Shown here in pieces: positions 1,617 through 25,789 of a DNA stretch of 64,000 nt (its first letter is position 1; each line of letters begins with the position of its first letter). The stretch is from the IMG/VR virus record IMGVR_UViG_3300043446_003193, positions 62,001-126,000 of that record. One strand, 5' to 3'. The notes under the pieces were generated by a model. That model worked only from the letters and a program-made list of their open reading frames with translations. It searched no databases and had not been told where the DNA came from. The position numbers and the translations under genes are program-made.

Positions 1617-1858
1617 TATTCAATGATTTTTGTTTCTTGTAATTCTTGTGGTAATAACTCATTTAAAGGTTTACCACAACTCGCACAAAGATATAATTCA
1701 ATTGGCATTACTGAATCTTTTGCTCCACCTGTCAATAGACGTGATATTTTTTTAAATCTATATCCTGGCATAAATACTTTTCCACCACAATCACATTCCA
1801 TGTCTCTTGCATCATTTAAGTTAAAATTAGGTGGTAATTGGTTCATTTGCTCTTGCAT
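1616..1858 (-). CDS. Zn-ribbon hypothetical protein
   Basis: CDCGG...CASCG Cys pairs; TAATG coupling to the next gene. Confidence 0.65.
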   Translation of the reverse strand: MQEQMNQLPPNFNLNDARDMECDCGGKVFMPGYRFKKISRLLTGGAKDSVMPIELYLCASCGKPLNELLPQELQETKIIE

Positions 1859-1864
1859 AATTTT

Positions 1865-2812
1865 TTATTTTATAATGTTTAATATTTGTATAATTGTTGA
1901 AGTGAATACGATTTCTTTATCCACCACTAATGCATCTTTTGATAATCCTTCTGCAATTGTAACTATCACATTTGCTGTATTTCCACTTGCATAATCATCA
2001 ACCTTATCATACAACATTGAATACATTTCTGAATAATCATTTAATTTATTATCCGCAACTGCTTGTCTAATTTTCATAAACACATTTCTCTTATCATCAT
2101 TTGATTTCAAAAGGTCAATCAATTTAGTTTGGAAATTTGATTCAACCATAATCTGATGGTCAACTTTCAATTCACCTTTTGCAGATTGTAATTGACAAGT
2201 ATTAAGTATTCTTCTAATATCTGGATAATAAGAATTGATAATATCCGCCATATTCTTTGGTTCATACTTAATGTTTTCAGCCTCTAAAATTTTAGCTACT
2301 TGAACTGCTACATCCTTTTTTGTAGGTGGAGTAATTGCAAATGATTGACATCTACTTTTGATTGGGTCAATAATCTTTTCGTGATAATTACAAGTTAAGA
2401 TAAAACGGCAATGTTTACTAAATGTTTCCATTAAGTTACGAAGGATTGCCTGTGCTCCAGGTGTCATATAATCAAACTCATCTAAGATAATAATCTTAAA
2501 TCCTGCAAAACCCATTGATGATGCAAAGTTCTTTACTTTGTTACGAACTGTGTCCACATTATTTTCATCTGATGCATTGATAATCATGCTATCACACTTA
2601 ATTGTATTTACTATTAACTTTGCTAATGTGGTCTTACCTGTCCCTGCTTTGCCATACAAAAGTAAATGTGGAATATCGTTATTATCCAAATATTGTTGTA
2701 TTGTTTCTTTTACAGTTTCATTTCCTACATATTCGGAAAGTGTTTGTGGGCGATACTTTTCTACCCATAATGTATGTTCTCTTTTAGAGACATCGTTTGC
2801 GAAAAAACTCAT
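1865..2812 (-). CDS. gp44: Clamp loader large subunit (gp44/RFC-like AAA+ ATPase)
   Basis: WVEKYRP RFC box, GKAGTGKT Walker A, ILDEFD Walker B, SRC motif. Confidence 0.93.
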   Translation of the reverse strand: MSFFANDVSKREHTLWVEKYRPQTLSEYVGNETVKETIQQYLDNNDIPHLLLYGKAGTGKTTLAKLIVNTIKCDSMIINASDENNVDTVRNKVKNFASSMGFAGFKIIILDEFDYMTPGAQAILRNLMETFSKHCRFILTCNYHEKIIDPIKSRCQSFAITPPTKKDVAVQVAKILEAENIKYEPKNMADIINSYYPDIRRILNTCQLQSAKGELKVDHQIMVESNFQTKLIDLLKSNDDKRNVFMKIRQAVADNKLNDYSEMYSMLYDKVDDYASGNTANVIVTIAEGLSKDALVVDKEIVFTSTIIQILNIIK

Positions 2813-3272: not shown

Positions 3273-3303
3273 CTAATATACAAATAATTTTTTAAAATGC
3301 AAA
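3273..3303 (-). promoter_or_regulatory. Bacteroidota-type promoter TTTG-N19-TATATTAG
   Basis: Read from the sequence upstream of dut. Confidence 0.55.
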
Positions 3304-5855: not shown

Positions 5856-7427
5856 TTATGGTTTGTAAAATATAAAGATTGGTTCGTATTTGTAAAACTG
5901 ACCTTCAATCTTCATACTATTTTTTGCTTTTGATAAATCCATTCCTGTCATCGGACTCATCGTCATTCTTAATTTTCCTCTATACTCCATTCCTAATTCA
6001 ACTAGAATATCAATTGAATCTTGCTCTAATGGGAAAAATTTATCCGTTCCAATTTTTATATCTGCAATATTCCAACAAATGTATCTATCATTTTTAAGAT
6101 ATTCAAATGCAGTTGTTAGTGTAGGTCGTAAGAAACCATCTCTCCAACTTTCATATGAACTAAATTTCTTAAATGATTGTGTATCATCATCGGAATATCT
6201 TTCTCTATCAAAGTATGGTGGAGAAGTAAATACAAAATCTAATTCACCTTTATACTTTTGAAATCTTTCTTCTAAGTGAATAATTTCAGAGCCAGTTGTA
6301 AAAATTTCGTAAGTATTTGCATGTCCCCAAAACGGGTTTGATGCTCCAGGTACTTTATTGTTAAAGAATTCTGCAAGATACTCATATCTAGTTTTTCCGA
6401 TTTCAGGTATTTGATTTTCTGTATTAGGGTCATTTCCTATATAATGTATATTTCTATCATCAACACTCAATGCTCCTAAAATTCTACCACCCCATCCAGC
6501 AGATGGGTCGTAAATATTAATCTTCTTTTGGTCTTTGATGTGGTTTGTAAATCTTTGGTAAAGATATTTTGCAGTTAGTGGTGGAAAATTTACCGCTGCT
6601 TGAGTTCCCATACCAATTCTAAATGCCGCAGTTGCCTCAGGGAATATAGTTTGTCCTAATGGATAAATTTTAATTTGAATTGGTTGTTTTGGAATATCAT
6701 ATAGATTATCAATATTCTCACCCCAATCTGCAGTTTTTAATGAAGATATGTTTTCATACTTCAATATACCCGCTGCATAAAGTTCTTTAACCTCTTGTGC
6801 AGTAATTGGTGGTGATGGAACTTTACTATCTGCTTGAGATAAACAAAATCCATGTCCTTCTAAGCTTTCACCAGATACCCATTTCTCAATCCATTCTTTA
6901 CCACTTTGGATATGTGAGTTATGAAATTCAGGATGATTTAAATGTAAAGTTTTAGAAAAACGATACATACCATCTTGTCTTGTCAATCTATTCATTTGTT
7001 TAATGAACTCTGGAAGATATTCATCATTTGCAAATACATCATATATAGATGGTTTTGGTTTATCATAAGTTGAACCACCAATACCTGTCTTATACATTGC
7101 AGGGAAGAATTGATTAACTGGTGTAGCAAACTTATTAAAGTTAAAGATGACTTCATTTCCTTCATCATCTTTTTCTTCAAACTCATTTACTTTATAAGTT
7201 TGTAGTCTTGAAAACTGCTCAATCATTTCTGATTCATCAACACCAATTCTAGGTGGTGCACCGGTTTCATTCCACTTTCTTACTGCTAATTCACGAAAGA
7301 ATGCCACCCACTCTCCGAACTTAGGGAATGGCATTTTAAGAACATCTTCGTATTTTAAGTTTACTTCTGGAGAGTAAATCCAATCGTTCTTTTCGTAAAA
7401 GTATTTTTTAGGATAATTAAAACTCAT
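5856..7427 (-). CDS. SAM-dependent DNA amino-methyltransferase-like protein, paralogue 1
   Basis: Motif I YDPSAGWGGR, motif IV FTSPPYF; long N-terminal extension. Confidence 0.8.
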   Translation of the reverse strand: MSFNYPKKYFYEKNDWIYSPEVNLKYEDVLKMPFPKFGEWVAFFRELAVRKWNETGAPPRIGVDESEMIEQFSRLQTYKVNEFEEKDDEGNEVIFNFNKFATPVNQFFPAMYKTGIGGSTYDKPKPSIYDVFANDEYLPEFIKQMNRLTRQDGMYRFSKTLHLNHPEFHNSHIQSGKEWIEKWVSGESLEGHGFCLSQADSKVPSPPITAQEVKELYAAGILKYENISSLKTADWGENIDNLYDIPKQPIQIKIYPLGQTIFPEATAAFRIGMGTQAAVNFPPLTAKYLYQRFTNHIKDQKKINIYDPSAGWGGRILGALSVDDRNIHYIGNDPNTENQIPEIGKTRYEYLAEFFNNKVPGASNPFWGHANTYEIFTTGSEIIHLEERFQKYKGELDFVFTSPPYFDRERYSDDDTQSFKKFSSYESWRDGFLRPTLTTAFEYLKNDRYICWNIADIKIGTDKFFPLEQDSIDILVELGMEYRGKLRMTMSPMTGMDLSKAKNSMKIEGQFYKYEPIFIFYKP

Positions 7428-8146
7428 TATGCAGTTAATTGAACTTCTACTAAATAATATTTTGAAGTAAAGTCATCAACTTTAAATTCAGCGTGAGCCA
7501 AACCTGCAGTTGAAACTTTTAAAGTAACTGAAGTTGCCTCTTTGTTTGCTGTAAGGATTTCTTTGAAATACTTTGCAGAGAAAGAGATTGGTTTAATTTG
7601 TTTTGTAAAATCTTTTTGTGCTGTAAATTCAATTCTATTTGAATTAACATTTGAATATCCTAATACAATTTTTAATTGCTCATCTGCTGATAAAATTGTA
7701 AAAGTATCAACATCACTTAATGCGTTTTTCGCTTTGATAAATTTATCAATAAACTTCGCATCAAATCCGATTTCAACATCCCATTCTGGAATACTTTTTA
7801 ATTCAGGAACAGATGGAATAACTGCCAAATCTGCTAATTGGAATTGTAATTTAGTATCACCATTCTTAATGAATAAGTTTACTGCTTTACCTTCAACTTG
7901 TTGAACATCAAATTCAATATCTTCGTCAGCTACTGATAACAATTTTGTTAATTGTGATGTTGTGTATACACCTAATTCTGGTGTTGTTTGTGTGAAATTA
8001 TCTAATTCAACTTCACCTAATACTGTTTTATCATCTGAGATAAAACGAGTAACTAATTTACCATCTGTCGCTTTCCAAGAAACAGATTCTACTAATCCAG
8101 CCAAATTATACTTTTGGATAAATCGTGTAACTCTTACTTTGTTCAT
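7427..8146 (-). CDS. gp45: Sliding clamp (T4 gp45-like)
   Basis: 239 aa, two-domain clamp-like pattern, ends KYYLVEV; lies in a replisome cluster with the clamp loader. Confidence 0.75.
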   Translation of the reverse strand: MNKVRVTRFIQKYNLAGLVESVSWKATDGKLVTRFISDDKTVLGEVELDNFTQTTPELGVYTTSQLTKLLSVADEDIEFDVQQVEGKAVNLFIKNGDTKLQFQLADLAVIPSVPELKSIPEWDVEIGFDAKFIDKFIKAKNALSDVDTFTILSADEQLKIVLGYSNVNSNRIEFTAQKDFTKQIKPISFSAKYFKEILTANKEATSVTLKVSTAGLAHAEFKVDDFTSKYYLVEVQLTA

Positions 8147-13873: not shown

Positions 13874-14929
13874 TTAATTTTTAGTAAACACAAATATTGG
13901 TTCTAATTTAGTTCCGTTTCCAGCTACCGAAGATAATATAAGGTACAAAATGTCAGTTTTTGTAAATCCCAATTCTTCTGCAATTCTAACGGTTTCCGTT
14001 TCAATTTGTTTATATTTTGGAGTGTTTGCAATGTTTATTAACATCTTTCCTCCCACTTTTAAACCAGTATGACAATTTGCCATAGTTTGTTTTAAAAATC
14101 CGTTTAACCAATCGGTTTCATTTGGAAACTTTTTATACGATTGAGTTTCTTCATCTGAATATTTTTCCGTATCAAAATATGGTGGTGAAGTAAAACACAA
14201 ATCCAAACTTTGTTCATCTGGTATAAATTCTTCCGAACCCATTTTATGGAGTATTATCTCCTTATTAAAGAAGTTTAATTCATCTTTTAATCGTATTAAC
14301 CCTTCGTATGTTTTAGTTGAAGGATCAGTTCCTATGTAGGTTTTACACCTACTTGTAAGGAATCCGGTCAATCTACCACCCCATCCACAACTCATGTCCC
14401 AAACGGTTTCTCCACCATAGTTGTTATAAATCCATTTGGCTACCGATGGACGAAAGTTACTTACTGATTGATTTCCTCCATAGATTTTAAAATTCTGTCT
14501 TAATCGGTTTAAAGTAAATGTACCGTTTCCATGTTTCAATTGCCAATCCCAAGTTTTTCTAATAACCTCTTTTAATTTGTTATCATCATTCCAATAATCA
14601 ATTGGTTTCATTGTATTGTTACCACATGCTACTTCAACCCAATGTGGAAAATAACTCCATGCTAATGATAGGCAATGCATGGTTTGTTCTAATTTTCCAT
14701 CTTTATAAATTGTATTTTCATCAAAATTAATCAATGATTTCAATTGGTTTAGTTTTTCATGCTTTGAAACATTATAATGTGGAAATCCTTTTTTTCGGTG
14801 ATAATCAAATATAATTTTTTCAGCATGTTCTCTATCAGTTACCTCAAATATGTTTGTGGTAATTTTATGATATTCTAAATCTAAATCATCAACTTCAATA
14901 AACTTACTAAAACTATTATAATTTATCAT
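13874..14929 (-). CDS. SAM-dependent DNA amino-methyltransferase-like protein, paralogue 3
   Basis: WDMSCGWGGR and FTSPPYF motifs; TAATG-coupled to the helicase. Confidence 0.8.
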   Translation of the reverse strand: MINYNSFSKFIEVDDLDLEYHKITTNIFEVTDREHAEKIIFDYHRKKGFPHYNVSKHEKLNQLKSLINFDENTIYKDGKLEQTMHCLSLAWSYFPHWVEVACGNNTMKPIDYWNDDNKLKEVIRKTWDWQLKHGNGTFTLNRLRQNFKIYGGNQSVSNFRPSVAKWIYNNYGGETVWDMSCGWGGRLTGFLTSRCKTYIGTDPSTKTYEGLIRLKDELNFFNKEIILHKMGSEEFIPDEQSLDLCFTSPPYFDTEKYSDEETQSYKKFPNETDWLNGFLKQTMANCHTGLKVGGKMLINIANTPKYKQIETETVRIAEELGFTKTDILYLILSSVAGNGTKLEPIFVFTKN

Positions 14930-16287
14930 TATCCCATATTCTCTACATACTTTTTGTGTAGTAGTTTCTTTTCAAGTCCTTCACCATTTTTACTTTCTTT
15001 TGTCGCCATCATACCATCAACCGAAGTTGCTGCAAATACATCCATTACACCGTGGAAGGTATCAATCTTTGCAGGGAATGTCATACCATCTGGTCCAAAT
15101 CTATTTTTTACAATATGAATACGACCTGTATTAGATAATTTATCTTTGGTCTTTCTACTCACACTCATAATGAAATCTGCAGTTTGAACTTTCTTATAAG
15201 AATCACCCACACTATCCGCTTGAATAACCTCATGGTCTATCGCTGCTCTATTTGTTTGTGTTGCTGTCCAAACAGGTATTCCCGTTTCACCACTCAAACC
15301 TCTTAGTTCTTCATAAATACCACCCAACTCTGCGTATAAACCATCACTACCCCTATTACCACTCTTTAATAAATCGGCATAATCAATGATAATAAGTTGT
15401 GGATTGAATCCAGTTGTTTTAACTTTTTCAATATGTGCAGATAAGGTTTTTGCTGATGCAAATTGTGGTGGATAGTATTTGATTTTTACCCTACCTTCCG
15501 TTTGTTTAACTTTACGAATGATTTCGGCTTTATTCATTTTTTGGTCTGCAGTAGTGATACCTGTAAGAATTGTGATATATCTTTGTCCTACATAACTTTC
15601 AGATAATTCCAAAGTGTAGTGTAATACATTAACACCTCTTTGTAATGCCGCACATGCTATTTTAGATAAGAACCAACTTTTACCGATACCAGATGGAGCC
15701 ATTACTACACCTAATTCACCAGGTCCTAAACCACCATCCATTAGTTCATCAATAACATCCCATCCGGTCCCAACTGAACTTCTTTTAACATTTTCTAAAA
15801 TAGATTCAAAATCATCAATAAAATCTAAACCCAAATCATTTTCCACACCTACTTTAGATGCGGCCATCATTGTATCTATGATTTTATCATAATTACCTGC
15901 TTTGAGAAGGTCTACCGATTTCAATAGAGCTTCTTTAACTTTCTGATTCTTTGCAAATGTAAGGTATTCTTTTTTTACATATGGTATATCTTCTGCACCA
16001 ACTTGTAGGTATACCGCTTTTAATTGTTCAATTGTGGTTTGTTTAAGAACTTTATCCTCAATTTCACCAACTTTAATCTTGAACACTTCCATTGTCGGAA
16101 TTGCACGATATTCATCAAAGTAGTTTTGTACTTCTTTTACAATCCATTGATTTGCCTGAGATTCAAAGAAATTTGGTTTAGTAATTTCAGTTACCTGTTC
16201 TAAAAACTTAGCATCTGTGATAAGTGAAGCAACAACTTTAGATTGATACGATTGGCCATATTTGACTAGTGTATCTACTGCTTCCAT
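14929..16287 (-). CDS. dnaB: Replicative DnaB-like helicase (T4 gp41-like)
   Basis: APSGIGKS Walker A, IIIDYADLL, TATQTNR, KNRFG. Confidence 0.92.
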   Translation of the reverse strand: MEAVDTLVKYGQSYQSKVVASLITDAKFLEQVTEITKPNFFESQANQWIVKEVQNYFDEYRAIPTMEVFKIKVGEIEDKVLKQTTIEQLKAVYLQVGAEDIPYVKKEYLTFAKNQKVKEALLKSVDLLKAGNYDKIIDTMMAASKVGVENDLGLDFIDDFESILENVKRSSVGTGWDVIDELMDGGLGPGELGVVMAPSGIGKSWFLSKIACAALQRGVNVLHYTLELSESYVGQRYITILTGITTADQKMNKAEIIRKVKQTEGRVKIKYYPPQFASAKTLSAHIEKVKTTGFNPQLIIIDYADLLKSGNRGSDGLYAELGGIYEELRGLSGETGIPVWTATQTNRAAIDHEVIQADSVGDSYKKVQTADFIMSVSRKTKDKLSNTGRIHIVKNRFGPDGMTFPAKIDTFHGVMDVFAATSVDGMMATKESKNGEGLEKKLLHKKYVENMG

Positions 16288-16565: not shown

Positions 16566-16883
16566 TTATCTAATAACCATTAATAATTCTGATTCTCTTA
16601 ATAAGATGTATTTGTTACCACCTACTTTGATTTCTACTCCTTGATGATATGGTGGTAGAATTACTTCATCGCCTACCTTTACTGTCATTGGGATTGCTAC
16701 ACCGGCTTGAGTATATAATCCATCACCAACTGCTTCTACTTTTGCTCTTTTTACATCTTCTGATTTTGCACTATCTGGAATAATAATTCCACCTGCTGTT
16801 TTTGATTCATCTTTAACATCCAATTCGGTCAATAAAACTCTATCACCTAATGGTTTTGCTAATTTGTCTGCTGCTTTTGCCAT
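16566..16883 (-). CDS. groES: Co-chaperonin GroES
   Basis: KPLGDRVL, GGIIIPD mobile loop, VKVGD, LLRESEL. Confidence 0.93.
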   Translation of the reverse strand: MAKAADKLAKPLGDRVLLTELDVKDESKTAGGIIIPDSAKSEDVKRAKVEAVGDGLYTQAGVAIPMTVKVGDEVILPPYHQGVEIKVGGNKYILLRESELLMVIR

Positions 16884-17106: not shown

Positions 17107-18159
17107 TTAAAATTTTGCGATGTGACTAAATGTTGATTGTAACCAATCTAATACATTTGGAAATCCTTCAAGCATTCTATGTTTTAATCCTAATTTTAGG
17201 AATGCTTGTTTATCAAATTTTGGAGTTGGTTCATCGTATCTATCCATAATTTTCATACGAAGATTACCACTAAACTCCGGTTCAGATAACTGCATCAATC
17301 TACGATTTCTTTCGCAAATTGCCAAATTATTTAAAAACAATTCATGTGCTTTACTTTGTTTATCCAAAGATTCAACATATTCAATCATACTTTCAGTTGT
17401 ATGATATGTTTCTTCTGTTAGAATTGGAAAACTTTTTATAATTGATTTTATTCCCAAACCATTGATACCGCCTACATTGTCAGATTTATCACCATCAATC
17501 ATTCTGAAATTAATGAAATTGTGTGGATGAATACCAAACTCTTCTAACACCTCGTCAATGTTATAAATTTTCTTTTTAGACGGAGAATAAACACTTACAT
17601 CTTTGTTTACCAATTGTAAGAAATCTTTATCGGTACTCATTAGTATAACTTTCTCACCTTCTTGCTTTAATTGAGTTGAAATGTATGCCATAACATCATC
17701 TGCTTCAATTCCATCATATACCATAACGGTAACAGGTAGACAAGTTAATAGTTCAGCAAGTCCGACCATTTGACGTTTCATAGAAACTTGTTCATCTTCT
17801 TCATTCATCAAATCGGTATATGCCCTATTTAATCTAATTTTGTTTTTACCTCTTTCAGATTTGTAACCCGAATATATTTGTTTTCTGCTGTTTGACCCAC
17901 CTTTACCGTCAAATGTAATAATAACTCTAGTTGGATTAAGAGTACGGATTGCAAAGCCGATACTCTTTAAAGTACCGACTATGCCTCCAATGTGGTCACC
18001 ATTATCGTTTAGATTTGGTGCGGTTGACCAGGAACGGATGAAGGTATTAAGACCATCAATAACCAATGTTTTAGAATTTCTATGTAAATCACCAAACTCA
18101 TTGTGTTCCCTATCTATTTCTTTTAGTATATTTAAATACTTTGCTTTAATCTGACTCAT
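17107..18159 (-). CDS. 5'-3' exonuclease / RNase H (T4 rnh, FEN-like)
   Basis: IDGLN, FDGKGG, YKSER, EADD, STDKDFLQL, GDKSDNVGGI motifs; start moved to ATG 18159. Confidence 0.9.
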   Translation of the reverse strand: MSQIKAKYLNILKEIDREHNEFGDLHRNSKTLVIDGLNTFIRSWSTAPNLNDNGDHIGGIVGTLKSIGFAIRTLNPTRVIITFDGKGGSNSRKQIYSGYKSERGKNKIRLNRAYTDLMNEEDEQVSMKRQMVGLAELLTCLPVTVMVYDGIEADDVMAYISTQLKQEGEKVILMSTDKDFLQLVNKDVSVYSPSKKKIYNIDEVLEEFGIHPHNFINFRMIDGDKSDNVGGINGLGIKSIIKSFPILTEETYHTTESMIEYVESLDKQSKAHELFLNNLAICERNRRLMQLSEPEFSGNLRMKIMDRYDEPTPKFDKQAFLKLGLKHRMLEGFPNVLDWLQSTFSHIAKF

Positions 18160-19249
18160 TTGCTTCGTCCGTTGTAATTTCAACTTCTTCCGATGCGGAA
18201 TTTTTGTATTGTAATATTGTTGCCTCACAAATCCTACGATAGATTTGATCCTTTAATTCTTCGTTTTCTAACATCTTAGGAAAATCCTTAGATTGAAACT
18301 TCATAACTTCACCACTATCAGTATCAATGTATTCATACCATGCACCGGCTTGCTTTACGATTTTACCATCCTTCATAACTGCCAACCAGCCACCATAGTT
18401 ATCAATACCTCTGTCAAAGAAAATGTCAAAGTCTGCATGTCTCAATGGTGGTCCCATTCTGTTTTTAATAACCTGACAACGAACTTTGATACCCACTATT
18501 CTATCACCTTGTTTCAATTGTCCCATATTCTTCAATCTCAATCTAACTGAACTATGAAATGCTAATGCCTTGCCACCCGATGTTGTCCAAGGGTCACCGA
18601 ACATTGCGTTCATCTTTTGTCTCAATTGGTTTGTGAATACTAGAGCGATGGATTGTCTACCAATCATATTGGTAATTTTTCTCATTGCTTTTGAAATGAT
18701 AATAGCTTTATCGGTTGCGTAACCATCTTTATCATAATCAGCTTCCATCTCTTTCTTTGAAGATGCTGCTGCTACTGAGTCAACTACGATTGTAACTAAT
18801 CTATCTTTGTCTCCCGTTCTAACCTTTTCAATAATTGTTTCACATGCTTCAAAGATTCCCTCAACGGTGTCTACTGAAACATACAATAATTTTGAAATAT
18901 CTACTCCGATTGCTTCTAAGTATTCTCTACTTACAGCAGTTTCGGTATCAATTAATACAGCTACTCCACCTTTGCGTTGTGTTTCAGCAAGGAGATGGGC
19001 GGAGAGCAGAGATTTTCCACTCTGCTCTAAACCCGTAATCTCACTAATACGTCCAACAGGGAAGCCGCCATAAGGTCTATTAGAGATTGCAACATCCAAC
19101 ATAGCATTACCAGTTGAAATCCAATCCTTAACATTGGTAGGAGCATCACCACCTTCATCAGTTAGAAAGTAGGCAATCTTACCATCCTTATTTTGTTTGT
19201 TTAATGAATCTGCAAGAATACTTGCTAAATCCTCTTCTCTTTTGGCCAT
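18146..19249 (-). CDS. recA: RecA/UvsX-like recombinase
   Basis: GLEQSGKS Walker A, VVDSVAA, FTNQLR, TSGGKALAFHSSVRL. Confidence 0.95.
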   Translation of the reverse strand: MAKREEDLASILADSLNKQNKDGKIAYFLTDEGGDAPTNVKDWISTGNAMLDVAISNRPYGGFPVGRISEITGLEQSGKSLLSAHLLAETQRKGGVAVLIDTETAVSREYLEAIGVDISKLLYVSVDTVEGIFEACETIIEKVRTGDKDRLVTIVVDSVAAASSKKEMEADYDKDGYATDKAIIISKAMRKITNMIGRQSIALVFTNQLRQKMNAMFGDPWTTSGGKALAFHSSVRLRLKNMGQLKQGDRIVGIKVRCQVIKNRMGPPLRHADFDIFFDRGIDNYGGWLAVMKDGKIVKQAGAWYEYIDTDSGEVMKFQSKDFPKMLENEELKDQIYRRICEATILQYKNSASEEVEITTDEANESD

Positions 19250-19262
19250 TGTAACCTAATTA

Positions 19263-20111
19263 TTAATTGTTAAATAAATCATCAAATGCTGATGCTACAT
19301 CATCCTTTGCTTTAGGAGTTTCATCTTCCCAAGGCAAATCGTTTGGTAAAGAACCAATACCTACACCAGGAATTTCTTTTGCTTCCGATGTTTTTGCAGG
19401 TTGTGCTTTTGGTTTTGGTGCTTCCAATTCCTCAACAATATCATCATCTACTCCAGATGGTGAAGATGGGTTTAACCAATTTTCTAAAATTGTTTTCAAT
19501 TCTGCGTAAGATAACTCCTGATATAATTCAGTAATTTCTTTTTGATTTTCTAATAAAGATTTAATCGTTGCAGGGTCTTCGTGCAATTTAGTTGTTGCAG
19601 GTTTAACTCTGATTGTTGTTGTAGGATAAGATGCGTTAGATTCTTCCGCTGAAGTTACTTCCAATACAATATCTCTACCTGTGATTGGGTCAGTAATATC
19701 ACCGTAATCAGGGTCTGCAATATAACCTAAGATATCTTGGTAAACTGTCTTACCAAATCCCCAAAACTTAACACCTTCGTTTTCTTTACCTCTTACGATA
19801 ACTGGTACGAAAGTTCTTAATTTTGGTTCCATTTTTTTACCTGCTTTCCAATCATCAGTATCACCTGTTCTCTTAAGTTTTTCTGCAAACTCAACGATAG
19901 GGTCAGGTCTACCAAATGACATTGGACTCAAATAAGTCTTGTTGTTAATGTTGTAGTGAAAATAAAGTTCAATAAAAGGAATGTCTTTGTTGAACTTGTA
20001 CGGAACGATTCTAACTTGTGATTTTCCGTTAGCCGGTTTGTAAATTGAATCCGACTTTTTAGTGTTGTTTTGTAAAGAGCTAAATCTCTTTAGTGCCAAT
20101 GAAATGTCCAT
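19263..20111 (-). CDS. gp32: Single-stranded DNA-binding protein (T4 gp32-like)
   Basis: VRIVPY...ELYFHY...DPI, KFWGFGKTVY, DITDP pattern; acidic C-terminus ending FDDLFNN. Confidence 0.8.
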   Translation of the reverse strand: MDISLALKRFSSLQNNTKKSDSIYKPANGKSQVRIVPYKFNKDIPFIELYFHYNINNKTYLSPMSFGRPDPIVEFAEKLKRTGDTDDWKAGKKMEPKLRTFVPVIVRGKENEGVKFWGFGKTVYQDILGYIADPDYGDITDPITGRDIVLEVTSAEESNASYPTTTIRVKPATTKLHEDPATIKSLLENQKEITELYQELSYAELKTILENWLNPSSPSGVDDDIVEELEAPKPKAQPAKTSEAKEIPGVGIGSLPNDLPWEDETPKAKDDVASAFDDLFNN

Positions 20112-20242: not shown

Positions 20243-20656
20243 TTATTTTGCCCATTTTCCCCTCTGTACTAATTGGGCAATTATACCATAAACTGATAGG
20301 TCTTGGTAGGTATCTTGGATAGATTCACCCACCTCATCTGGTTGTCCCAAAACTATCAATTGTTTCAATCTTTGGATTTTATCGTTAATTCTAAACCAAA
20401 GGCCTGTAAGTGATAATTTTATATCTTCTTTGGTTTGTAGTGAAGTTCCAACGGAGATATTTCCTGGTCCATAATTTCTTTGTTTTTTACAAAATGTTTC
20501 GTACATTTCGTCTTGAATTTTCTTAAATTCAATCATCATTTCGGGATATTCCCTTTCGCAAAATTCTACTGCTGATTCTTCTTTCATATAACTTGTTTTT
20601 ACTTTTCTTATATCCGATATCGGTGGTGGGTTCGGAATTCTTGGTGAATATAACAT
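20243..20656 (-). CDS. DUF1599 / nucleotide-modification-associated domain 1-like protein
   Basis: KKQRNYG...RINDKIQRL...DTYQDLSVYGII pattern; start uncertain (20656 or 20587). Confidence 0.65.
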   Translation of the reverse strand: MLYSPRIPNPPPISDIRKVKTSYMKEESAVEFCEREYPEMMIEFKKIQDEMYETFCKKQRNYGPGNISVGTSLQTKEDIKLSLTGLWFRINDKIQRLKQLIVLGQPDEVGESIQDTYQDLSVYGIIAQLVQRGKWAK

Positions 20657-20660
20657 AATT

Positions 20661-20963
20661 TTATTTTTTCCAAAATTGATACCATTTTTTCTTTTTAACT
20701 TCTGGCTTTGCAAAGGGTTGCGTATTATCCCAAATGTTTACCATTCCTCCATATCTAACCATCATCATTTGACAAAATAATTGATGATATTGTGGTGGGA
20801 TTTTTTCAAAGTCTGCTAGGATTTTTACATCTAATGTAACACCTTGACCATCTCCTGTCATTAACTTTAGATAATCGTGCATTTCTACGACAGTACTACT
20901 TTTTACTGACAAATGTGCCCCATCTCCAATATGAAATTCACCTTTTTGTTGTTTTGGTGCCAT
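20661..20963 (-). CDS. Hypothetical protein
   Basis: Packed ORF in the operon. Confidence 0.6.
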   Translation of the reverse strand: MAPKQQKGEFHIGDGAHLSVKSSTVVEMHDYLKLMTGDGQGVTLDVKILADFEKIPPQYHQLFCQMMMVRYGGMVNIWDNTQPFAKPEVKKKKWYQFWKK

Positions 20964-21580: not shown

Positions 21581-21975
21581 TTTTGTGTATTGAAACTTTT
21601 AAAAACTTTTGTAGATATTTTTTTGTATCCTACATTAGATGTAGTAAGAATACAATTTCTGAACTCTTCCCAATCAATCATATATGAATTATCAACCTGT
21701 CCACCTGTTTTTTCCTTAACTACTTCGTTAAGTGCATTAATAGTGTATATTGTATTTGATTGTTTTTTTCTATGTACTAAGATGGTTTTCCATTCGGAAG
21801 GTATTGCATTAGAACCTTTTTCAACATTAAATGTAATAAATGCTTCTTCAGGTCTCAACTTACTTTCTAAGATGAAAACATTTGGGTTAGTTAGTGTATA
21901 GTTACTTAATATAAAATCTACCGATTTATCTAACTCATCCTTTGTCGTAAATAGGCAAAGTAATTGTGTGTTCAT
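21568..21975 (-). CDS. Hypothetical protein
   Basis: 135 aa ORF, TAATG-coupled to the upstream gene. Confidence 0.65.
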   Translation of the reverse strand: MNTQLLCLFTTKDELDKSVDFILSNYTLTNPNVFILESKLRPEEAFITFNVEKGSNAIPSEWKTILVHRKKQSNTIYTINALNEVVKEKTGGQVDNSYMIDWEEFRNCILTTSNVGYKKISTKVFKSFNTQNLEN

Positions 21976-24059
21976 TATCTTTTATTTATTTTAGCATCTA
22001 TTTCTCTACATGCATCTTCAAAATCTTTAGTTGGTTTACATTGTAGTCCTACTACACCATTATATCCAACTCCCTTCTCTCTCATTTCTATACTTGCTAA
22101 TTTAATAGGTTTTTCTGGTTTTTTACCTTTTGCAGAATACACAATTGATGCTACTCCGTTTACAACTTTGATTGATAAAAATTCTTTAATACTATTCCAA
22201 TCATCTGTTCCAAACATTTCTTGCATATGAGCTTGTGTAATATACATACTATCTATCTGCATTGTTTCTACACCTTCAACCATAGTTTTCATAGGAATTG
22301 CTTCTTGTAATTTTCTCAATAACATTCCCTGAAATTCTTTATCAGTTGCCATTTTTTCAGCAGATTCTTTCATAAAATCATAAGTAATCTGTCTGTGTGA
22401 ATCAATCCATTTTCTATCACCACTATATTCTGCTAATACTTTATTGTAAACCAAAACTGCTTTCTTAAATTCTTTTTCACTCATTGTTCCTAAGAATTTT
22501 CTAAACTCATCTACATCTAATGTCTTGGTTTTACTCAAATACTTAGCAACTTTTCTTACCAATTGTTCATCATTTTTATCAATAAACAACGGGTCGTTTT
22601 GACCTTTTTCCCTACAAGCTTTAATTGCTCTACCTAAATCTGAAGATGGGATTTCTCTGGTTTGTAAAAATCCTTTTTCTGCAGATGCCATTTGTTTTTC
22701 TTGTAATTCTGTATTTTTAACAGGTGCTTTTGAAAGAGCTTGTTCTGATAATTGTCTTAATTCTGCATCTTCTGCTTTACCAAAACGAGGGTCTTTAGCA
22801 TCCTTCATATTTTTTAATTCATTAGCTCTCTTTTCTTTTTGAGCACCTAATGTGTAGAACCAGTTTTCAGCATCACCTAAACCGGCATTTAATAAATAAA
22901 TTTGCCAATCCTTCTTACAACTGATTTCAATATTTTGAATTTGTCCTTTTATCTTAACCTGTGCGTTGATATCTGTTGAATCTCCTTTATCATCATAGTT
23001 TGCACCCAATGCTTCTTGTTGTGCTCTAACATCCCAAGTCATACCGGTAACTTCCCAATTTCCTTTACCATATTGTCTATCCATATTTTTGATAAACGCA
23101 TCGTGAGCACCCGCCATTTGTTTAATCCAACTTCTATCTAAAATTGGAACTCCACCTGCCGCTTCAATTGCATCTGCATTTGCTTCCAATGATTTTATAA
23201 ATTCTGCTCTTGCTGCCATTCCAGCTTGAGTTGGTGGGAACGAATATACCGCCTGCATTGCCAATTCGTTAGCTTGAGCAGATACTTGTCCTGCACCATA
23301 TTGGTCAGTAATCATTCCGATTGGTGGTTCAAATGTACCTTGTTTAGACATTTTAAGTAATGAACGAAGGGCATCATATCCAGCCGGTGGTAATTTACTT
23401 TGTAAAAATTTAGCCAATGCAGGAGGATAATCATATTTACTAACTACTTGACCAGGATATGCTTTCTTAAATGCCGCTATTGCCTTTTCTGTTGAAATTC
23501 CAGAAGGAGGTAAAAATTTATTTCTATTAGCCGCTTTCTTTTGGTCTAGAGTTTTTGAACCTTTAGTTCCGTATTTTTGTTTTGGAGCCACTACAACTGC
23601 ACCCTTTTCTACATCTACATTTTTAGGTGTTGTATCTTTTGTTTTTTTCTCTTTTGCCTTTTCAGCATCTGTTGTTGTAATATTTGCTTTAGGTGCTGTT
23701 TGTTGTTTTCCTACTTTTGGAGCAGGTTTTCCTGCAGCAGGTTTTTCTTTTGGTAATTGACCACCATTTGCCTTTTTAGCTTTACTAATTTCAGCAGATG
23801 TTGGTATATCGTGGATTGCAGGGTCCATTTTAGAAACCACATAGATGTTTCCTGATTTTTTGTTCTTAACTACATCCTCTTCGTTTAAATACGAAAAATA
23901 TACTCTTGCTTTCTGTGCCATTTCGTTAGCATCTGAAACCCCATTTTCTTTTAGGATTTGAGCAAGTTTTGTAACCTGTTCCTCTTTTGTCAAGTCTATA
24001 ATACCACTTTCTACTCTGTATTCTAACTCTTTAAGGATTTCTTGAAAATTTATTGACAT
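21975..24059 (-). CDS. Large hypothetical protein, possible restriction-endonuclease-fold domain
   Basis: 694 aa; Lys/Pro/Ala-rich linker; DSTDI-x12-EISCK motif; preceded by the late-type motif. Confidence 0.55.
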   Translation of the reverse strand: MSINFQEILKELEYRVESGIIDLTKEEQVTKLAQILKENGVSDANEMAQKARVYFSYLNEEDVVKNKKSGNIYVVSKMDPAIHDIPTSAEISKAKKANGGQLPKEKPAAGKPAPKVGKQQTAPKANITTTDAEKAKEKKTKDTTPKNVDVEKGAVVVAPKQKYGTKGSKTLDQKKAANRNKFLPPSGISTEKAIAAFKKAYPGQVVSKYDYPPALAKFLQSKLPPAGYDALRSLLKMSKQGTFEPPIGMITDQYGAGQVSAQANELAMQAVYSFPPTQAGMAARAEFIKSLEANADAIEAAGGVPILDRSWIKQMAGAHDAFIKNMDRQYGKGNWEVTGMTWDVRAQQEALGANYDDKGDSTDINAQVKIKGQIQNIEISCKKDWQIYLLNAGLGDAENWFYTLGAQKEKRANELKNMKDAKDPRFGKAEDAELRQLSEQALSKAPVKNTELQEKQMASAEKGFLQTREIPSSDLGRAIKACREKGQNDPLFIDKNDEQLVRKVAKYLSKTKTLDVDEFRKFLGTMSEKEFKKAVLVYNKVLAEYSGDRKWIDSHRQITYDFMKESAEKMATDKEFQGMLLRKLQEAIPMKTMVEGVETMQIDSMYITQAHMQEMFGTDDWNSIKEFLSIKVVNGVASIVYSAKGKKPEKPIKLASIEMREKGVGYNGVVGLQCKPTKDFEDACREIDAKINKR

Positions 24060-24107: not shown

Positions 24108-25376
24108 TTAGTCTATTACCACTAAATCGTTGTAATTCTTTCCTTCGTAACTTCGGACCGGAAACCCACCCCTTTCCATTATCTCCTTAACCCCATTCAA
24201 TACCTCTTCTCTTTCAATCGGATGTGTATCTATAAGAAACGCATCATATGTGTATAGAATGAACTTGCTCATCTTACCTTCTAAGAAATCTAATACCTCT
24301 CTAATTTTCATATAATTCACTTCAGTCTCTAAGGCCTGTAACAGGTAACTAAACACCTTTTGTTCGGTTGCGGCTTCAATCCTACTAAAATGTATTTCTC
24401 TTTTATATAAGAGTGTCGTTAGTTTTCCAGAAATGATGAACTTTTGGTGTACTTCTCTTATCCACTCATCTACCTTTTGAAAAAACGGAATCCCTCTCGC
24501 CTTATCATCTAATCCCCCATAAAGATAACGGAAGGTTAATAACTTCGCTTCCTCATACCCAACCCCATAAAGGTCGGCAAGGTGTTGGTGAGCGGTAACC
24601 CCTTTAGGAAATTCGTATCCAACTATTTTCGCAATTAGGCGGATGTGATACGATTCGTAATCAAATTGTATTAGGGTTCCGTTGTGGTGACGGGATATAA
24701 TGGATTCTCTCGTTCCATCTCCTTTATTAAGGGCAGACCAGTTTACGTTTAGATGACGATTGGATGGACGACCGGTGATTGTGTATGGATTGTATTGTGT
24801 GTAAACGATACCACCTCTTTTGATATAAGCGGGATTGAAAGCAAAACTATCAATAAATTTTTCCTCTACGACCTTTACCCCAGCCCCTTCCAGCCTTCCC
24901 AATGTTTGTATTGCTTTGGAATATTTTAAATTCGGTTCTGTTCTTAGGGTTGGTAATGGAATTGTTTTTAGAACTTCGTACCACTTCATTAATGGTATAC
25001 AATCATTGAGTTCTTTATAATCATTTCTATACCCCTTATAAACTGATCCTACGAACTCGCTGAATATAAATGGTTTCCCATACTCTTCAAAGTATAACCA
25101 TTCAAAATCATATCCTAATCCACCAAGATACCTACTATCTAAAACGACAGTATCTTCGTTGATAAATTCCGATACATTAATCATTGGTAGTTTACCAGCA
25201 TCTATATGATGAAAATTAATAATACCGTCTTCCGATTTTGTTCTATAATAAAGAAACGACATAACTGTTCCTAATGGATGTGCTCTATGAGAACTCCAAA
25301 CGGGTATCAATAATTCTACTTTTGGTTTTGTAGATATTAGTTGTTTTAGTGTAGATTTTGTTTCAATTAAGTTCAT
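24108..25376 (-). CDS. Degenerate family A DNA polymerase (polymerase domain only)
   Basis: TITGRPS, motif A FDYESYHIRL, motif B AKLLTFRYLYGG, motif C YTYDAF. Confidence 0.75.
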   Translation of the reverse strand: MNLIETKSTLKQLISTKPKVELLIPVWSSHRAHPLGTVMSFLYYRTKSEDGIINFHHIDAGKLPMINVSEFINEDTVVLDSRYLGGLGYDFEWLYFEEYGKPFIFSEFVGSVYKGYRNDYKELNDCIPLMKWYEVLKTIPLPTLRTEPNLKYSKAIQTLGRLEGAGVKVVEEKFIDSFAFNPAYIKRGGIVYTQYNPYTITGRPSNRHLNVNWSALNKGDGTRESIISRHHNGTLIQFDYESYHIRLIAKIVGYEFPKGVTAHQHLADLYGVGYEEAKLLTFRYLYGGLDDKARGIPFFQKVDEWIREVHQKFIISGKLTTLLYKREIHFSRIEAATEQKVFSYLLQALETEVNYMKIREVLDFLEGKMSKFILYTYDAFLIDTHPIEREEVLNGVKEIMERGGFPVRSYEGKNYNDLVVID

Positions 25377-25382
25377 ACGAAC

Positions 25383-25413
25383 TCAATATACGAAAAATAT
25401 TTGTATTTACAAA
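25383..25413 (-). promoter_or_regulatory. Bacteroidota-type promoter TTTG-N19-TATATTGA
   Basis: Read from the sequence; 6 nt from the ATG of the PolA-like gene. Confidence 0.6.
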
Positions 25414-25414: not shown

Positions 25415-25789
25415 TTATTTATGAAATTGTAATAGGTTAGGTAAATACAAACCTATGTTTTTTATTTTTGCAGCTGCAATAGAAATTGTTGCTTTGTTTG
25501 AGTTTCTAACACCCATATCATCAATACCACCTTCCACTTTATAAGTAGTATCAATTGGTCCAGATATTCTCCAATACATTTTTATAGCTAACCAAAATGG
25601 GTTTTCTAAATGTTGTGCATATACATTCTGGTCTACTTCGTACACATGTCCGTTTGAATCATTTGCTTTTTGAACAAAATATCTTTGAATGAATCCATTT
25701 GAATAATCATACTTTGTTGGAATTGGTACAATTGTTTTTGGGAATTGTATAGTAAATTGTTCTATATTTTGTGCTACATCTTTATACAT
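25415..25789 (-). CDS. Hypothetical protein (baseplate-adjacent)
   Basis: 124 aa ORF at the end of the structural operon. Confidence 0.6.
   Translation of the reverse strand: MYKDVAQNIEQFTIQFPKTIVPIPTKYDYSNGFIQRYFVQKANDSNGHVYEVDQNVYAQHLENPFWLAIKMYWRISGPIDTTYKVEGGIDDMGVRNSNKATISIAAAKIKNIGLYLPNLLQFHK

What the first reader, a model, noticed from the sequence alone, without database searches (positions are those of the whole stretch)
24108..25376. Second DNA polymerase: a minimal family A enzyme with a rewritten active site alongside an intact PolB
Seen: the two catalytic Asp equivalents remain (motif A D-YES, motif C Y-D-A) as does K-x3-F-x3-YG. Read against E. coli Pol I, E710 (sugar steric gate) becomes His, R754 becomes Tyr and HDE becomes YDA. 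There is no clear exonuclease domain. The gene has its own host-type promoter. Inference: relaxed sugar or base selectivity (primer synthesis, gap filling or handling of modified nucleotides), or a non-catalytic role. No DnaG-type primase is present in this window.
Basis: partly seen in the sequence, partly recalled or inferred. Interest (0 to 1): 0.7.

Follow-up and report, generated by a model that had tools for sequence, protein, structure and literature searches.

The report
Compact second DNA polymerase (divPolA1) of phage
This gene encodes a small, proofreading-dead relative of bacterial DNA polymerase I, from a phage family named divPolA1 in 2024; its altered active site is real and conserved across the family, but what the enzyme does is still untested.

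Summary
ORF 24108..25376 (minus strand, 422 aa) is a family A polymerase. It keeps both catalytic Asp residues and K-x3-F-x3-YG. Klenow E710 is His, R754 is Tyr and HDE is YDA. These are not private quirks: in 86 diverse relatives His244, Tyr377-Asp378, Lys278, Phe282 and Tyr286 are invariant.

The AlphaFold2 model (pLDDT 96) superposes on bacterial Pol I large fragments (Z 26) along its whole length. It has a vestigial exonuclease domain and a shortened thumb.

The family is already published as divPolA1 (Yutin et al. 2024, PMC11348598). The type member, gene 1 of Flavobacterium phage immuto, matches at E 9e-42 and carries the same signature. That paper's text does not discuss these substitutions.

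The gene heads a conserved module (SSB, UvsX, Pol I-type 5' nuclease, DnaB) and has a conserved Bacteroidota-like promoter. PolB lies beside a clamp and clamp loader, so it is the likely replicase. A DnaG-type primase exists outside the window, which weakens the priming idea.

Best reading: an active, exonuclease-free accessory DNA polymerase that forms a split Pol I with the phage 5' nuclease. Its sugar selectivity is untested. This is a new member of a known kind, of moderate interest.

The parts
24108..25376 (-). divPolA1-type family A DNA polymerase gene, 422 aa
   Evidence: ORF; profile vs Klenow 2.1e-11; model pLDDT 96; VIA Z 26 to bacterial Pol I large fragments; BLASTP 9e-42 to immuto gene 1, the type divPolA1
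25017..25376 (-). N-terminal vestigial 3'-5' exonuclease-like domain (about residues 1-120)
   Evidence: The model aligns from residue 1 with Bst LF 301 and KlenTaq 294, which are their vestigial exo domains. No DNA_pol_A_exo1 hit at E<=1. Only two conserved acidic columns (59, 90), so no DEDD set.
24807..25016 (-). Shortened thumb region (about residues 121-190)
   Evidence: In the profile-to-Klenow alignment, Klenow chain residues 236-311 (about 76 aa) have no counterpart between the two aligned stretches.
24639..24662 (-). Motif A: D239-Y-E-S-Y-H244-I-R246. Catalytic Asp kept; His at the position of the Klenow E710 steric gate.
   Evidence: Alignments; D239 and H244 are 86/86 in family alignment A1.
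24516..24557 (-). O-helix / motif B: Y274-EEA-K278-LLT-F282-RYL-Y286-G287. Tyr at the position of Klenow R754.
   Evidence: alignment; helix 274-287 in the model; Y274 73/86 (Arg 3/86); K278, F282 and Y286 86/86.
24321..24359 (-). Motif 6 helix: K340-V-F-S-Y-L-L-Q347-A-L-E350-T-E352. Q347 equals Klenow Q849. E350 is a family-specific invariant Glu.
   Evidence: alignment; Q347 and E350 86/86.
24228..24257 (-). Motif C: L-Y-T-Y377-D378-A379-F-L-I-D. Catalytic Asp kept; Klenow H881->Tyr and E883->Ala.
   Evidence: Y377 and D378 86/86; Ser 71, Ala 13, Gly 2 at position 379.
25385..25413 (-). Promoter-like element TTTG-N19-TATATT in the 38-nt gap upstream of the gene (Bacteroidota-like -33/-7 layout)
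   Evidence: One search gives a 9/12 sigma-70-like match, not enriched on its own. The same extended motif occurs 17 times on the coding strand of the genome, including upstream of the primase gene, against 6 looser hits on the other strand. It is conserved upstream of the gene in 28 of 41 relatives, whichever gene lies upstream.
21975..24059 (-). Conserved downstream gene of unknown function (694 aa)
   Evidence: No Pfam, PHROG or NCBIfam hit. Follows the polymerase gene in most close relatives and some distant ones. Weak Atlas leads to restriction-endonuclease-like folds.
20243..20713 (-). DUF1599 (nucleotide modification associated domain 1) protein, part of the conserved module in many loci
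   Evidence: Pfam 5e-05, below the cut-off; synteny.
19263..20111 (-). Single-strand DNA-binding protein
   Evidence: phrog_1192 and phrog_224, about 1e-14; syntenic in nearly all loci.
18146..19249 (-). UvsX/RecA-like recombinase
   Evidence: phrog_97, 1.3e-75; synteny.
17107..18228 (-). Pol I-type 5'-3' exonuclease / flap endonuclease. The likely true start is the ATG at 18159. It is the only such gene in the genome.
   Evidence: Pfam 5_3_exonuc_N 1.9e-30. The best NCBIfam hit is the N-terminal 244 positions of DNA polymerase I, NF004397, 1.2e-40. Acidic active-site residues are invariant in 23 relatives. Single copy. Start inferred.
16572..16856 (-). GroES (Cpn10) co-chaperonin inside the replication module
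   Evidence: PF00166, 3.9e-25, at genome 78572-78856.
14929..16287 (-). DnaB-like replicative helicase
   Evidence: phrog_19, 2.8e-82; synteny.
3292..5847 (-). Family B DNA polymerase with exonuclease domain, the 'regular' polymerase of this phage
   Evidence: PF00136 9.8e-36 and PF03104 2.2e-24; the only PolB hit in the genome.
1164..2812 (-). Clamp-loader subunits: gp62-like at 1164..1616 and gp44-like AAA+ at 1865..2812
   Evidence: Phage_clamp_A 8.1e-10; AAA, DNA_pol3_delta2 and Gp44_lid.
7427..8146 (-). Probable sliding clamp (PCNA/gp45-like)
   Evidence: NCBIfam 'DNA polymerase sliding clamp' 1.5e-07; weak PCNA_C.

Best explanation
The gene encodes a member of the divPolA1 family. This is a miniaturised, Klenow-like family A polymerase of 422 aa: a dead exonuclease-like domain, a shortened thumb, and a palm and fingers. 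It belongs to a large clade of big aquatic myovirus-like phages.

Shown here: it has the Pol I large-fragment fold. It keeps the two metal-binding Asp residues, the O-helix Lys, Phe and Tyr, and the DNA-contacting Arg and Gln. It carries a family-wide altered nucleotide pocket: His for the steric-gate Glu, Tyr for the triphosphate-binding Arg, and Y-D-S/A for H-D-E. It is transcribed from its own early-type promoter at the head of a conserved module of SSB, UvsX, a Pol I-type 5' nuclease and DnaB. The genome's processive replicase is most likely the PolB, which sits with the clamp and clamp loader.

Inferred: the enzyme is an active, non-proofreading, poorly processive DNA-dependent DNA polymerase. 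Together with the separately encoded Pol I-type 5' nuclease it would do the work of a split Pol I. That work is filling gaps after primer removal on the lagging strand, and short-patch synthesis during UvsX-driven recombination and repair.

The altered pocket probably changes nucleotide handling, but in which direction is unknown.
For: Family membership:
- BLASTP 9e-42 to immuto gene 1, with the same motifs D-x4-H, Y-x3-K-x3-F-x3-YG and YDA.
- PMC11348598 names immuto and related phages as divPolA1 carriers and describes the same fold features and gene context.

Fold: pLDDT 96; Foldseek 1e-15 to 1e-17 to Klenow, Taq and Bst; VIA Z 26 with 398 residues aligned.

Active enzyme: D239, D378, K278, F282, Y286, R203, R223 and Q347 are invariant in 86 sequences at 30-72% identity.

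Conserved role: 975 clusters at 50% identity. At least 580 IMG/VR loci. The order polymerase, SSB, UvsX, FEN, DnaB is kept down to 31% identity and in phages Mel-JY01 and immuto.

Split Pol I:
- The nearest structures are bacterial Pol I large fragments.
- The phage 5' nuclease matches the Pol I N-terminal domain best (NF004397, 1.2e-40). It is the only FEN in the genome and has an intact acidic site.

PolB as replicase: it has exonuclease and polymerase domains and lies beside the clamp loader and clamp.

The main polymerase is interchangeable while divPolA1 stays. Immuto has a regular PolA and no PolB. This phage, Mel-JY01 and two IMG/VR relatives have PolB.

Shared promoter type with the primase and other early genes.
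Against: - There are no biochemical data for any member of the family.
- From the published Klenow mutant literature, recalled from memory, loss of R754, E883 or E710 each lowers activity strongly. A canonical mechanism therefore cannot simply be assumed.
- No compensating invariant basic residue was found in the O-helix.
- The complex prediction with the 5' nuclease gave no answer (score 0.02). A physical Pol-FEN pairing is therefore unsupported, though also not contradicted.
- The polymerase and 5' nuclease genes are not adjacent.
- No DNA ligase gene was found in the genome. A complete phage-encoded maturation pathway is therefore not shown.
- PMC11348598 stresses that divPolA1, not the regular polymerase, has the conserved replication context. 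That would also fit a more central replicative role.
Confidence: 0.55

Rival explanations
1. The altered pocket makes it a ribonucleotide-using or primer-making enzyme. It would be a PolA-family primase or short RNA/DNA primer synthase serving the neighbouring DnaB helicase, by analogy with CcPol-MP or TV-Pols.
For: - The steric-gate Glu is replaced in every member.
- The family consensus Y-D-S-F in motif C resembles the H-D-S-F that I recall for T7 RNA polymerase. This is memory only and a lead.
- There is precedent that a PolA catalytic domain can prime: CcPol-MP (PMC7581432, PMC10061031). TV-Pols are predicted primase-polymerases (PMC2579912).
- The gene is linked to DnaB in all loci.
Against: - The genome has a DnaG-type primase with zinc ribbon, DNAG_N and Toprim, under the same promoter type.
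- TV-Pols keep the RxxxK motif and go with D5-like helicases. Here the Arg is Tyr and the helicase is DnaB.
- No small OB-fold partner was identified. The upstream 124-aa protein gave no hits.
- F282 and Y286, the Klenow F762 and Y766 equivalents, are invariant as in DNA polymerases.
- All 50 best structural matches are DNA polymerases I and none is an RNA polymerase.
- His is bulky and may still exclude a 2'-OH.
Confidence: 0.15
2. It is a polymerase specialised for modified nucleotides or a modified template. It would be needed because these phages replace or decorate bases.
For: - The type phage immuto replaces all dG by a 7-deazaguanine derivative (bioRxiv 10.1101/2023.04.13.536721).
- The window holds a DUF1599 'nucleotide modification associated' protein inside the module, three DNA-methylase-like proteins, an Asn-synthase-like amidotransferase, a GNAT and a dUTPase.
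- DUF1599 is syntenic with the polymerase gene in many loci.
Against: - The substituted residues (E710, R754, H881 and E883 equivalents) face the sugar, triphosphate and metal site. They do not face the major-groove side of the base, where such modifications sit.
- tblastn with immuto QueD, QueE, FolE, DpdA, DpdN and QueF found nothing in this genome. The family therefore occurs without that pathway.
- In immuto the modification is attributed to the transglycosylase DpdA3 rather than to a polymerase.
Confidence: 0.1
3. divPolA1 is the conserved core replicase of the module, and the interchangeable 'regular' polymerase (here PolB) is the accessory enzyme.
For: - divPolA1 keeps a fixed replication context while the regular polymerase is family A, B or C in different members (PMC11348598).
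Against: - It has no proofreading site and a shortened thumb. Both argue against processive, accurate copying of about 210 kb.
- Here PolB has an exonuclease domain and lies beside the clamp loader and clamp.
Confidence: 0.1
4. It is a catalytically dead scaffold that only binds DNA or partner proteins.
For: - Several residues important in Klenow are changed.
- The single sequence falls below the Pfam cut-off.
Against: - Both metal-binding Asp residues and the whole set K278, F282, Y286, R203, R223 and Q347 are invariant across 86 sequences at about 30% identity. The replacement residues H244, Y377 and E350 are also invariant. This is the pattern of a working, re-tuned site, not of decay.
Confidence: 0.05

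Closest known systems
divPolA1 (Yutin et al. [quoted passage not shown]
   Same: - About 420-440 aa.
- Palm with catalytic residues kept, shortened thumb and inactivated exonuclease domain.
- Followed by SSB, recombinase, 5'-3' exonuclease and DnaB.
- Present beside a 'regular' polymerase.
- Same motif signature in the pairwise alignment.
   Different: - Only 30% identical to the immuto protein.
- The genome is 209 kb, against 155-190 kb in the paper.
- The regular polymerase here is a PolB lying next to the clamp and clamp loader. In immuto it is a PolA next to GroES/GroEL and deazaguanine genes.
- The paper lists 14 phages. The searches here find 975 clusters at 50% identity and at least 580 IMG/VR loci.
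- The paper's text does not discuss the His, Tyr and YDS/A substitutions.
Bacterial DNA polymerase I large fragments (Klenow, KlenTaq, Bst LF)
   Same: - Same overall fold over the whole length (Z 26).
- TGR, motif A Asp, K-x3-F-x3-YG, Q849 and motif C Asp are all kept.
- Like KlenTaq and Bst LF, it has a vestigial exonuclease domain.
   Different: - About 120-160 residues shorter, with a thumb tip of about 76 aa missing.
- Steric-gate Glu->His, R754->Tyr, H881->Tyr, E883->Ser/Ala, and a new invariant Glu350.
- The 5' nuclease is a separate gene.
- Below the Pfam gathering score.
CcPol-MP / PolA-SSB primases of Bacillota mobile elements (PMC7581432, PMC10061031)
   Same: - An N-terminally reduced family A polymerase on a mobile genome, next to a helicase.
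   Different: - No identified small OB-fold partner.
- The helicase is DnaB-type, and a DnaG-type primase is also present.
- No detectable sequence link was seen in any search here.
TV-Pol family (Iyer, Abhiman and Aravind 2008, PMC2579912)
   Same: - A minimal family A-like polymerase core in viruses and mobile elements.
   Different: - TV-Pols keep RxxxK and are fused or linked to D5-like helicases.
- Here the Arg is Tyr, the N-terminus is a vestigial exonuclease domain, and the context is SSB, UvsX, FEN and DnaB.
Split T7-like PolA (S-SBP1 type; Czernecki et al. 2023, PMC10201439)
   Same: - A family A polymerase whose nuclease function is not in the same polypeptide.
   Different: - There the active 3'-5' exonuclease is a neighbouring gene produced by recent fission.
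- Here the exonuclease domain is retained but dead. The separate gene is a 5' nuclease several kb away.

Membership tests
divPolA1 (PMC11348598) | Sequence homology to the named members (immuto gene 1) | tested here: met
   tblastn 5e-34; BLASTP 9e-42 at 30% identity over residues 119-408, with the same motifs.
divPolA1 (PMC11348598) | Palm domain with the main catalytic residues conserved | tested here: met
   D239 and D378 are invariant, and the profile aligns them to Klenow D705 and D882.
divPolA1 (PMC11348598) | Truncated thumb | tested here: met
   Klenow chain residues 236-311 have no counterpart. 422 aa against 576 aa of Bst LF, with 398 aligned.
divPolA1 (PMC11348598) | 3'-5' exonuclease domain present but inactivated | tested here: met
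   The fold aligns from residue 1 to the vestigial exo domains of Bst LF and KlenTaq. No PF01612 hit. Only two conserved acidic columns in residues 1-125.
divPolA1 (PMC11348598) | Conserved replication genes downstream | tested here: met
   SSB, UvsX, FEN and DnaB follow in the window, in 80 IMG/VR loci, in Mel-JY01 and in immuto.
divPolA1 (PMC11348598) | Genome also encodes a 'regular' polymerase of family A, B or C | tested here: met
   PolB at 3292..5847. No second PolA and no PolC.
divPolA1 (PMC11348598) | Chaperonin (GroES/GroEL) and nucleotide-metabolism genes near the regular polymerase | tested here: inconclusive
   A dUTPase lies next to PolB and the RNR about 6 kb away. GroES is about 11 kb from PolB, inside the divPolA1 module. 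No GroEL was searched for by family; tblastn with immuto GroEL found nothing.
Canonical family A DNA polymerase (Pfam PF00476 / Pol I-like) | Reaches the Pfam gathering score | tested here: not met
   22.8 bits against a cut-off of 34.3. Some relatives do carry the precomputed PF00476 label.
Canonical family A DNA polymerase (Pfam PF00476 / Pol I-like) | Right-hand Pol I fold with motifs A, B and C in order | tested here: met
Canonical family A DNA polymerase (Pfam PF00476 / Pol I-like) | Glu steric gate five residues after the motif A Asp | tested here: not met
   His in 86 of 86.
Canonical family A DNA polymerase (Pfam PF00476 / Pol I-like) | R-x3-K in the O-helix and H-D-E in motif C | tested here: not met
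   Tyr in 73/86 (Arg in 3/86) at the Arg position. Y-D-S/A/G in 86/86.
TV-Pol / PolA-SSB primases | RxxxK kept; linked to a D5-like helicase or a small OB-fold partner; stands in for a primase | tested here: not met
   The Arg is lost. The helicase is DnaB-type. A DnaG-type primase is present. The fold of the 124-aa upstream protein was not predicted, so an OB partner is not strictly excluded.
T7-like single-subunit RNA polymerase | Large N-terminal promoter-binding domain and specificity loop; RNA polymerases among the nearest structures | tested here: not met
   422 aa. The 50 best VIA matches and the 50 best Foldseek matches are all DNA polymerases.

The most novel reading that the evidence does not exclude
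The invariant His gate, Tyr and Y-D-S/A pocket (with the new invariant Glu350) gives divPolA1 a changed substrate chemistry. Examples would be tolerance or preference for ribonucleotides, or the ability to start or extend very short primers.

This would make it the constant, specialised partner of a replication module whose main replicase can be swapped between families A, B and C. It would be a natural family A polymerase with a re-engineered sugar and triphosphate site, present in about a thousand phage lineages.
Probability: 0.15. Interest if true: 0.7.

Novelty: new member of a known kind. Interest (0 to 1): 0.4.

Why it matters
The family was named only in 2024, from 14 genomes, and no member has been studied biochemically. 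This window shows three things.

- The family is far larger than reported: about a thousand 50%-identity clusters, found in freshwater, marine, Flavobacterium and Microcystis phages.
- Its active site differs from all textbook family A DNA polymerases at four positions that Klenow mutant work treats as important, and those differences are invariant across the family.
- It comes with a Pol I-type 5' nuclease, so together the two look like a split Pol I.

If the pocket changes sugar or primer requirements, the enzyme would be a natural experiment on the steric gate. It would also be a compact (422 aa) candidate tool polymerase. If it is simply a gap-filling enzyme, it is an ordinary accessory replication gene.

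Tried and rejected
- Complex prediction of the polymerase with the phage 5' nuclease, using family alignments A1 and A2, scored 0.02. The tool's verdict was 'no answer', so it counts neither for nor against binding.
- Search for RNA sequencing runs holding the gene, to see a transcript start at the promoter: none was listed. Only DNA runs from freshwater metagenomes were found.
- Atlas look-alike search for the conserved 124-aa upstream protein, as a possible small partner like MP of CcPol. It gave only scores of 0.84 to portal-like clusters, which is within noise.
- The plain sigma-70 scan of the gene region found 7 sites against 9.4 +/- 4.0 expected, so it is not informative by itself. The bare TAnnTTTG count is only mildly enriched and is not strand-specific. 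The promoter claim rests on the extended recurrent motif and its conservation.
- tblastn of immuto's 7-deazaguanine genes, regular PolA, GroES and GroEL against this genome found only the PD-(D/E)XK nuclease. Pfam does find a GroES, so this tblastn misses divergent genes.
- TV-Pol, CcPol and T7-like RNA polymerase memberships were considered and rejected on the tested features listed in the membership table.
- The single-sequence phmmer placement of motif B (RLIAK on Taq RRAAK) was rejected in favour of the profile alignment.
- dN/dS was not computed. The nearest relatives are 79% identical or less at protein level, so synonymous sites would be saturated.
- Residue-level superposition of the N-terminal domain on the Klenow exonuclease site, and inspection of whether H244, Y377 and E350 touch each other, were not possible because model coordinates are not exposed.
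Full report
**What is there.**
The window is part of a 209,443-bp virus record (window = bases 62001-126000). It is AT-rich, and every sizeable gene lies on the minus strand. The finding's coordinates are exactly one ORF, 24108..25376 on the minus strand, 422 aa.

The single sequence is only weakly recognised as a family A polymerase:
- Pfam DNA_pol_A scores 22.8 bits, under the 34.3-bit cut-off.
- PHROG 17 'DNA polymerase' gives 5.7e-08.
- KlenTaq chains give about 1e-3.

**A large, conserved family.**
- A word-indexed search found 516 proteins of about 422 aa. Many lie on 150-245 kb contigs.
- An exhaustive HMMER search of 1.84 billion representatives found 975 clusters at E<=1e-3 and 455 at E<=1e-30. 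Nearly all are 400-460 aa.
- IMG/VR holds at least 580 loci.
- DNA nearly identical to this stretch occurs in freshwater metagenomes from about ten studies.
- Among isolated or named phages, relatives are in Flavobacterium phage immuto, Microcystis phage Mel-JY01 and a 484-kb uncultured phage.

**Fold and residue mapping.**
I aligned 86 diverse members (A1; 30-72% identity to the query).
- The profile matches Klenow at 2.1e-11.
- AlphaFold2 on A1 gave pLDDT 96 and pTM 0.93.
- Foldseek's best hits are Klenow, KlenTaq, Bst LF, Pol nu and Pol theta.
- VIA-align gives Z about 26, with 398 of 422 residues aligned to Bst large fragment 301-876 and to KlenTaq 294-832.

The protein is therefore a compacted whole 'large fragment'. 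Its N-terminal ~120 residues correspond to the vestigial exonuclease domains of Taq and Bst. Its thumb lacks about 76 residues, because Klenow chain positions 236-311 are unmatched.

- D239-YESY-H244-I-R246 aligns with D705-YSQI-E710-L-R712.
- Y274-EEA-K278-LLT-F282-RYL-Y286-G aligns with R754-x3-K758-x3-F762-x3-Y766-G.
- Y377-D378-A379 aligns with H881-D882-E883.

In A1 the following are 86/86: D239, H244, K278, F282, Y286, Q347, E350, Y377, D378, R203 (TGR) and R223. The R754 position is Tyr in 73 and Arg in 3. The E883 position is Ser 71, Ala 13, Gly 2. So the 'rewritten' site is a family signature under strong constraint, not decay.

In the N-terminal domain only two acidic columns are conserved: D/E59 in 86/86 and D90 in 81/86. 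With them are H33 (80/86) and H57 (81/86). That is too few carboxylates for a DEDD exonuclease site. What these four residues do is unexplained.

**It is already named.**
Yutin et al. (Virol J 2024, PMC11348598) describe 'divPolA1' in immuto_3-5A and 13 related phages of 155-190 kb. Their description matches:
- Palm catalytic residues kept, thumb truncated, 3'-5' exonuclease inactivated.
- A conserved array of replication genes downstream.
- A 'regular' polymerase of family A, B or C elsewhere in the genome.

The window protein matches immuto gene 1 at 9e-42 with the same motifs (DFDGYH, Y-x3-K-x3-F-x3-YG, YDA). All the descriptive features were met here, as set out in the membership table. 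The paper's text does not mention the steric gate, histidine or Okazaki processing. No later paper uses the name. A 2023 reclassification of PolAs into 19 clusters has no obvious place for this family.

**Context.**
Reading downstream on the minus strand from the polymerase gene:
- a conserved 694-aa unknown protein;
- DUF1599;
- SSB;
- UvsX;
- a 5'-3' exonuclease;
- GroES;
- DnaB;
- a methylase-like protein;
- ribonucleotide reductase.

Upstream lie unknown, probably baseplate, genes, then the baseplate hub and tail sheath.

The order polymerase, SSB, UvsX, FEN, DnaB holds in 80 IMG/VR loci down to 31% identity, and in Mel-JY01 and immuto.

The 5' nuclease matches the N-terminal 244 positions of bacterial DNA polymerase I models best (1.2e-40). 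It has its acidic residues invariant and is the only one in the genome.

PolB (851 aa, with exonuclease and polymerase domains) lies with dUTPase, both clamp-loader subunits and a probable sliding clamp. No PolC and no second PolA were found.

A DnaG-type primase is encoded outside the window, at genome 182911-183870. It scores phrog_47 at 1.7e-53, with DNAG_N and the DnaG zinc ribbon above cut-off. No DNA ligase domain was found.

Immuto has a regular PolA and no PolB. Mel-JY01 and two IMG/VR relatives have PolB. This confirms that the main polymerase is interchangeable while divPolA1 stays.

**Promoter.**
The 38-nt gap upstream holds TTTG-N19-TATATT (25385-25413, minus strand). The generic scan alone is not significant. 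Two further results support it:
- The same extended motif (TTTGGTAAT.TCAAA.ATTTTTCGTATATT) occurs 17 times on the coding strand of the genome, usually 6-30 nt before an ATG. One copy lies in front of the primase gene. The other strand has 6 looser hits.
- A TTTG-N17-22-TAnnTT(T/G) element sits upstream of the gene in 28 of 41 relatives, whatever the upstream gene is.

From my own knowledge, this layout resembles the -33/-7 promoter of Bacteroidota. One relative's contig is labelled as a Bacteroidota bin.

**How it most likely works.**
Shown: the fold, the invariant catalytic set, the dead exonuclease domain, the short thumb, the conserved module, the separate Pol I-type 5' nuclease, and the PolB with clamp and clamp loader.

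Inferred: the enzyme is an active, non-proofreading, low-processivity DNA polymerase that acts with the 5' nuclease as a split Pol I. It would fill gaps after primer removal and carry out recombination-associated synthesis. PolB would copy the bulk of the genome. I put about 0.9 on family membership and about 0.5 on this role.

The altered pocket is the open point. From general knowledge, Tyr or Phe act as steric gates in other polymerase families. His for Glu therefore need not relax sugar choice. The loss of the Arg and of the motif C Glu suggests changed triphosphate and metal handling. The new invariant Glu350 may compensate, but I could not inspect coordinates to check.

**Rivals.**
Five alternatives were considered.
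- A primase or rNTP-using enzyme. CcPol-MP is a precedent, but a DnaG primase is present, RxxxK is lost, there is no OB partner, and all structural neighbours are DNA polymerases.
- A polymerase for modified DNA. Immuto DNA is fully deazaguanine-substituted, but that pathway is absent here, and the changed residues do not face the base.
- The true replicase. This is the paper's hint, but the enzyme has no proofreading and a short thumb, and the clamp genes lie by PolB.
- A dead scaffold. The invariance pattern contradicts this.
- A physical Pol-FEN complex. The prediction gave no answer.

**Verdict.**
This is a new member of a known kind. The added value here is the family-wide active-site signature, the scale of the family, and the split Pol I reading.

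Noticed in passing
window 25385-25413 (-), 21551-21580 (-), 51981-52010 (-), 1134-1163 (-), 3275-3303 (-); genome 183859-183888 (-) and others: A recurrent 30-nt motif, TTTGGTAAT.TCAAA.ATTTTTCGTATATT, occurs 17 times on the coding strand of the 209-kb genome. It usually lies 6-30 nt before a start codon, including ahead of the primase, the PD-(D/E)XK nuclease and the polymerase gene. It looks like an early or middle promoter class with a Bacteroidota-like -33/-7 layout and very short leaders.
   Followed up: partly
window 25017-25376 (-), residues 1-120 of the polymerase: The vestigial exonuclease-like domain keeps four conserved polar residues across the family: H33 (80/86), H57 (81/86), D/E59 (86/86) and D90 (81/86). 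They do not make a DEDD set. Whether they cluster into a metal or other site could not be checked without coordinates.
   Followed up: partly
window 21975-24059 (-): A 694-aa protein immediately downstream of the polymerase gene is conserved in close relatives and some distant ones. It has a Lys/Ala/Pro-rich linker and no Pfam, PHROG or NCBIfam hit. Atlas structure leads point weakly to restriction-endonuclease-like (PD-(D/E)XK) folds.
   Followed up: partly
window 25415-25789 (-): A 124-aa protein of unknown function sits directly upstream of the polymerase gene in many loci, down to about 30% identity. It is probably the last gene of the structural block, but a small polymerase partner was not excluded.
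   Followed up: partly
window 5856-7427, 8207-9436, 13874-14929, 9427-9954, 9941-11398, 20243-20713 (all -): A cluster of possible DNA-modification genes: three proteins with weak N6_N4 DNA-methylase-like hits (all below the Pfam cut-off), a GNAT acetyltransferase, an asparagine-synthase-like glutamine amidotransferase, and a DUF1599 'nucleotide modification associated domain 1' protein. This suggests the phage DNA may be modified. The immuto-type 7-deazaguanine genes are not detectable.
   Followed up: partly
window 17107-18228 (-): The mechanical ORF of the 5' nuclease starts at a GTG at 18228 and overlaps the UvsX gene by 83 nt. Relatives begin at a Met matching the ATG at 18159 (M-S-Q-I...), so the real protein is probably 350 aa.
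   Followed up: yes
window 16572-16856 (-): A GroES (Cpn10) co-chaperonin gene lies between DnaB and the 5' nuclease, inside the replication module. tblastn with the immuto GroEL found no GroEL.
   Followed up: partly
whole genome G000: No ATP- or NAD-dependent DNA ligase adenylation domain was found in the 209-kb genome by Pfam-based six-frame search. Nick sealing may depend on the host or on an unrecognised enzyme.
   Followed up: partly
window 1-64000: Every ORF of 150 aa or more but one (an overlapping 155-aa ORF) lies on the minus strand. GC skew is negative in every 2-kb bin across 64 kb, so the transcription direction is uniform over replication and structural modules.
   Followed up: no
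window 261-1127 (-): A PD-(D/E)XK nuclease (PF12705, 5.6e-19) lies beside the clamp loader. It is the only gene of the compared immuto region with a tblastn match in this genome (37% identity).
   Followed up: no
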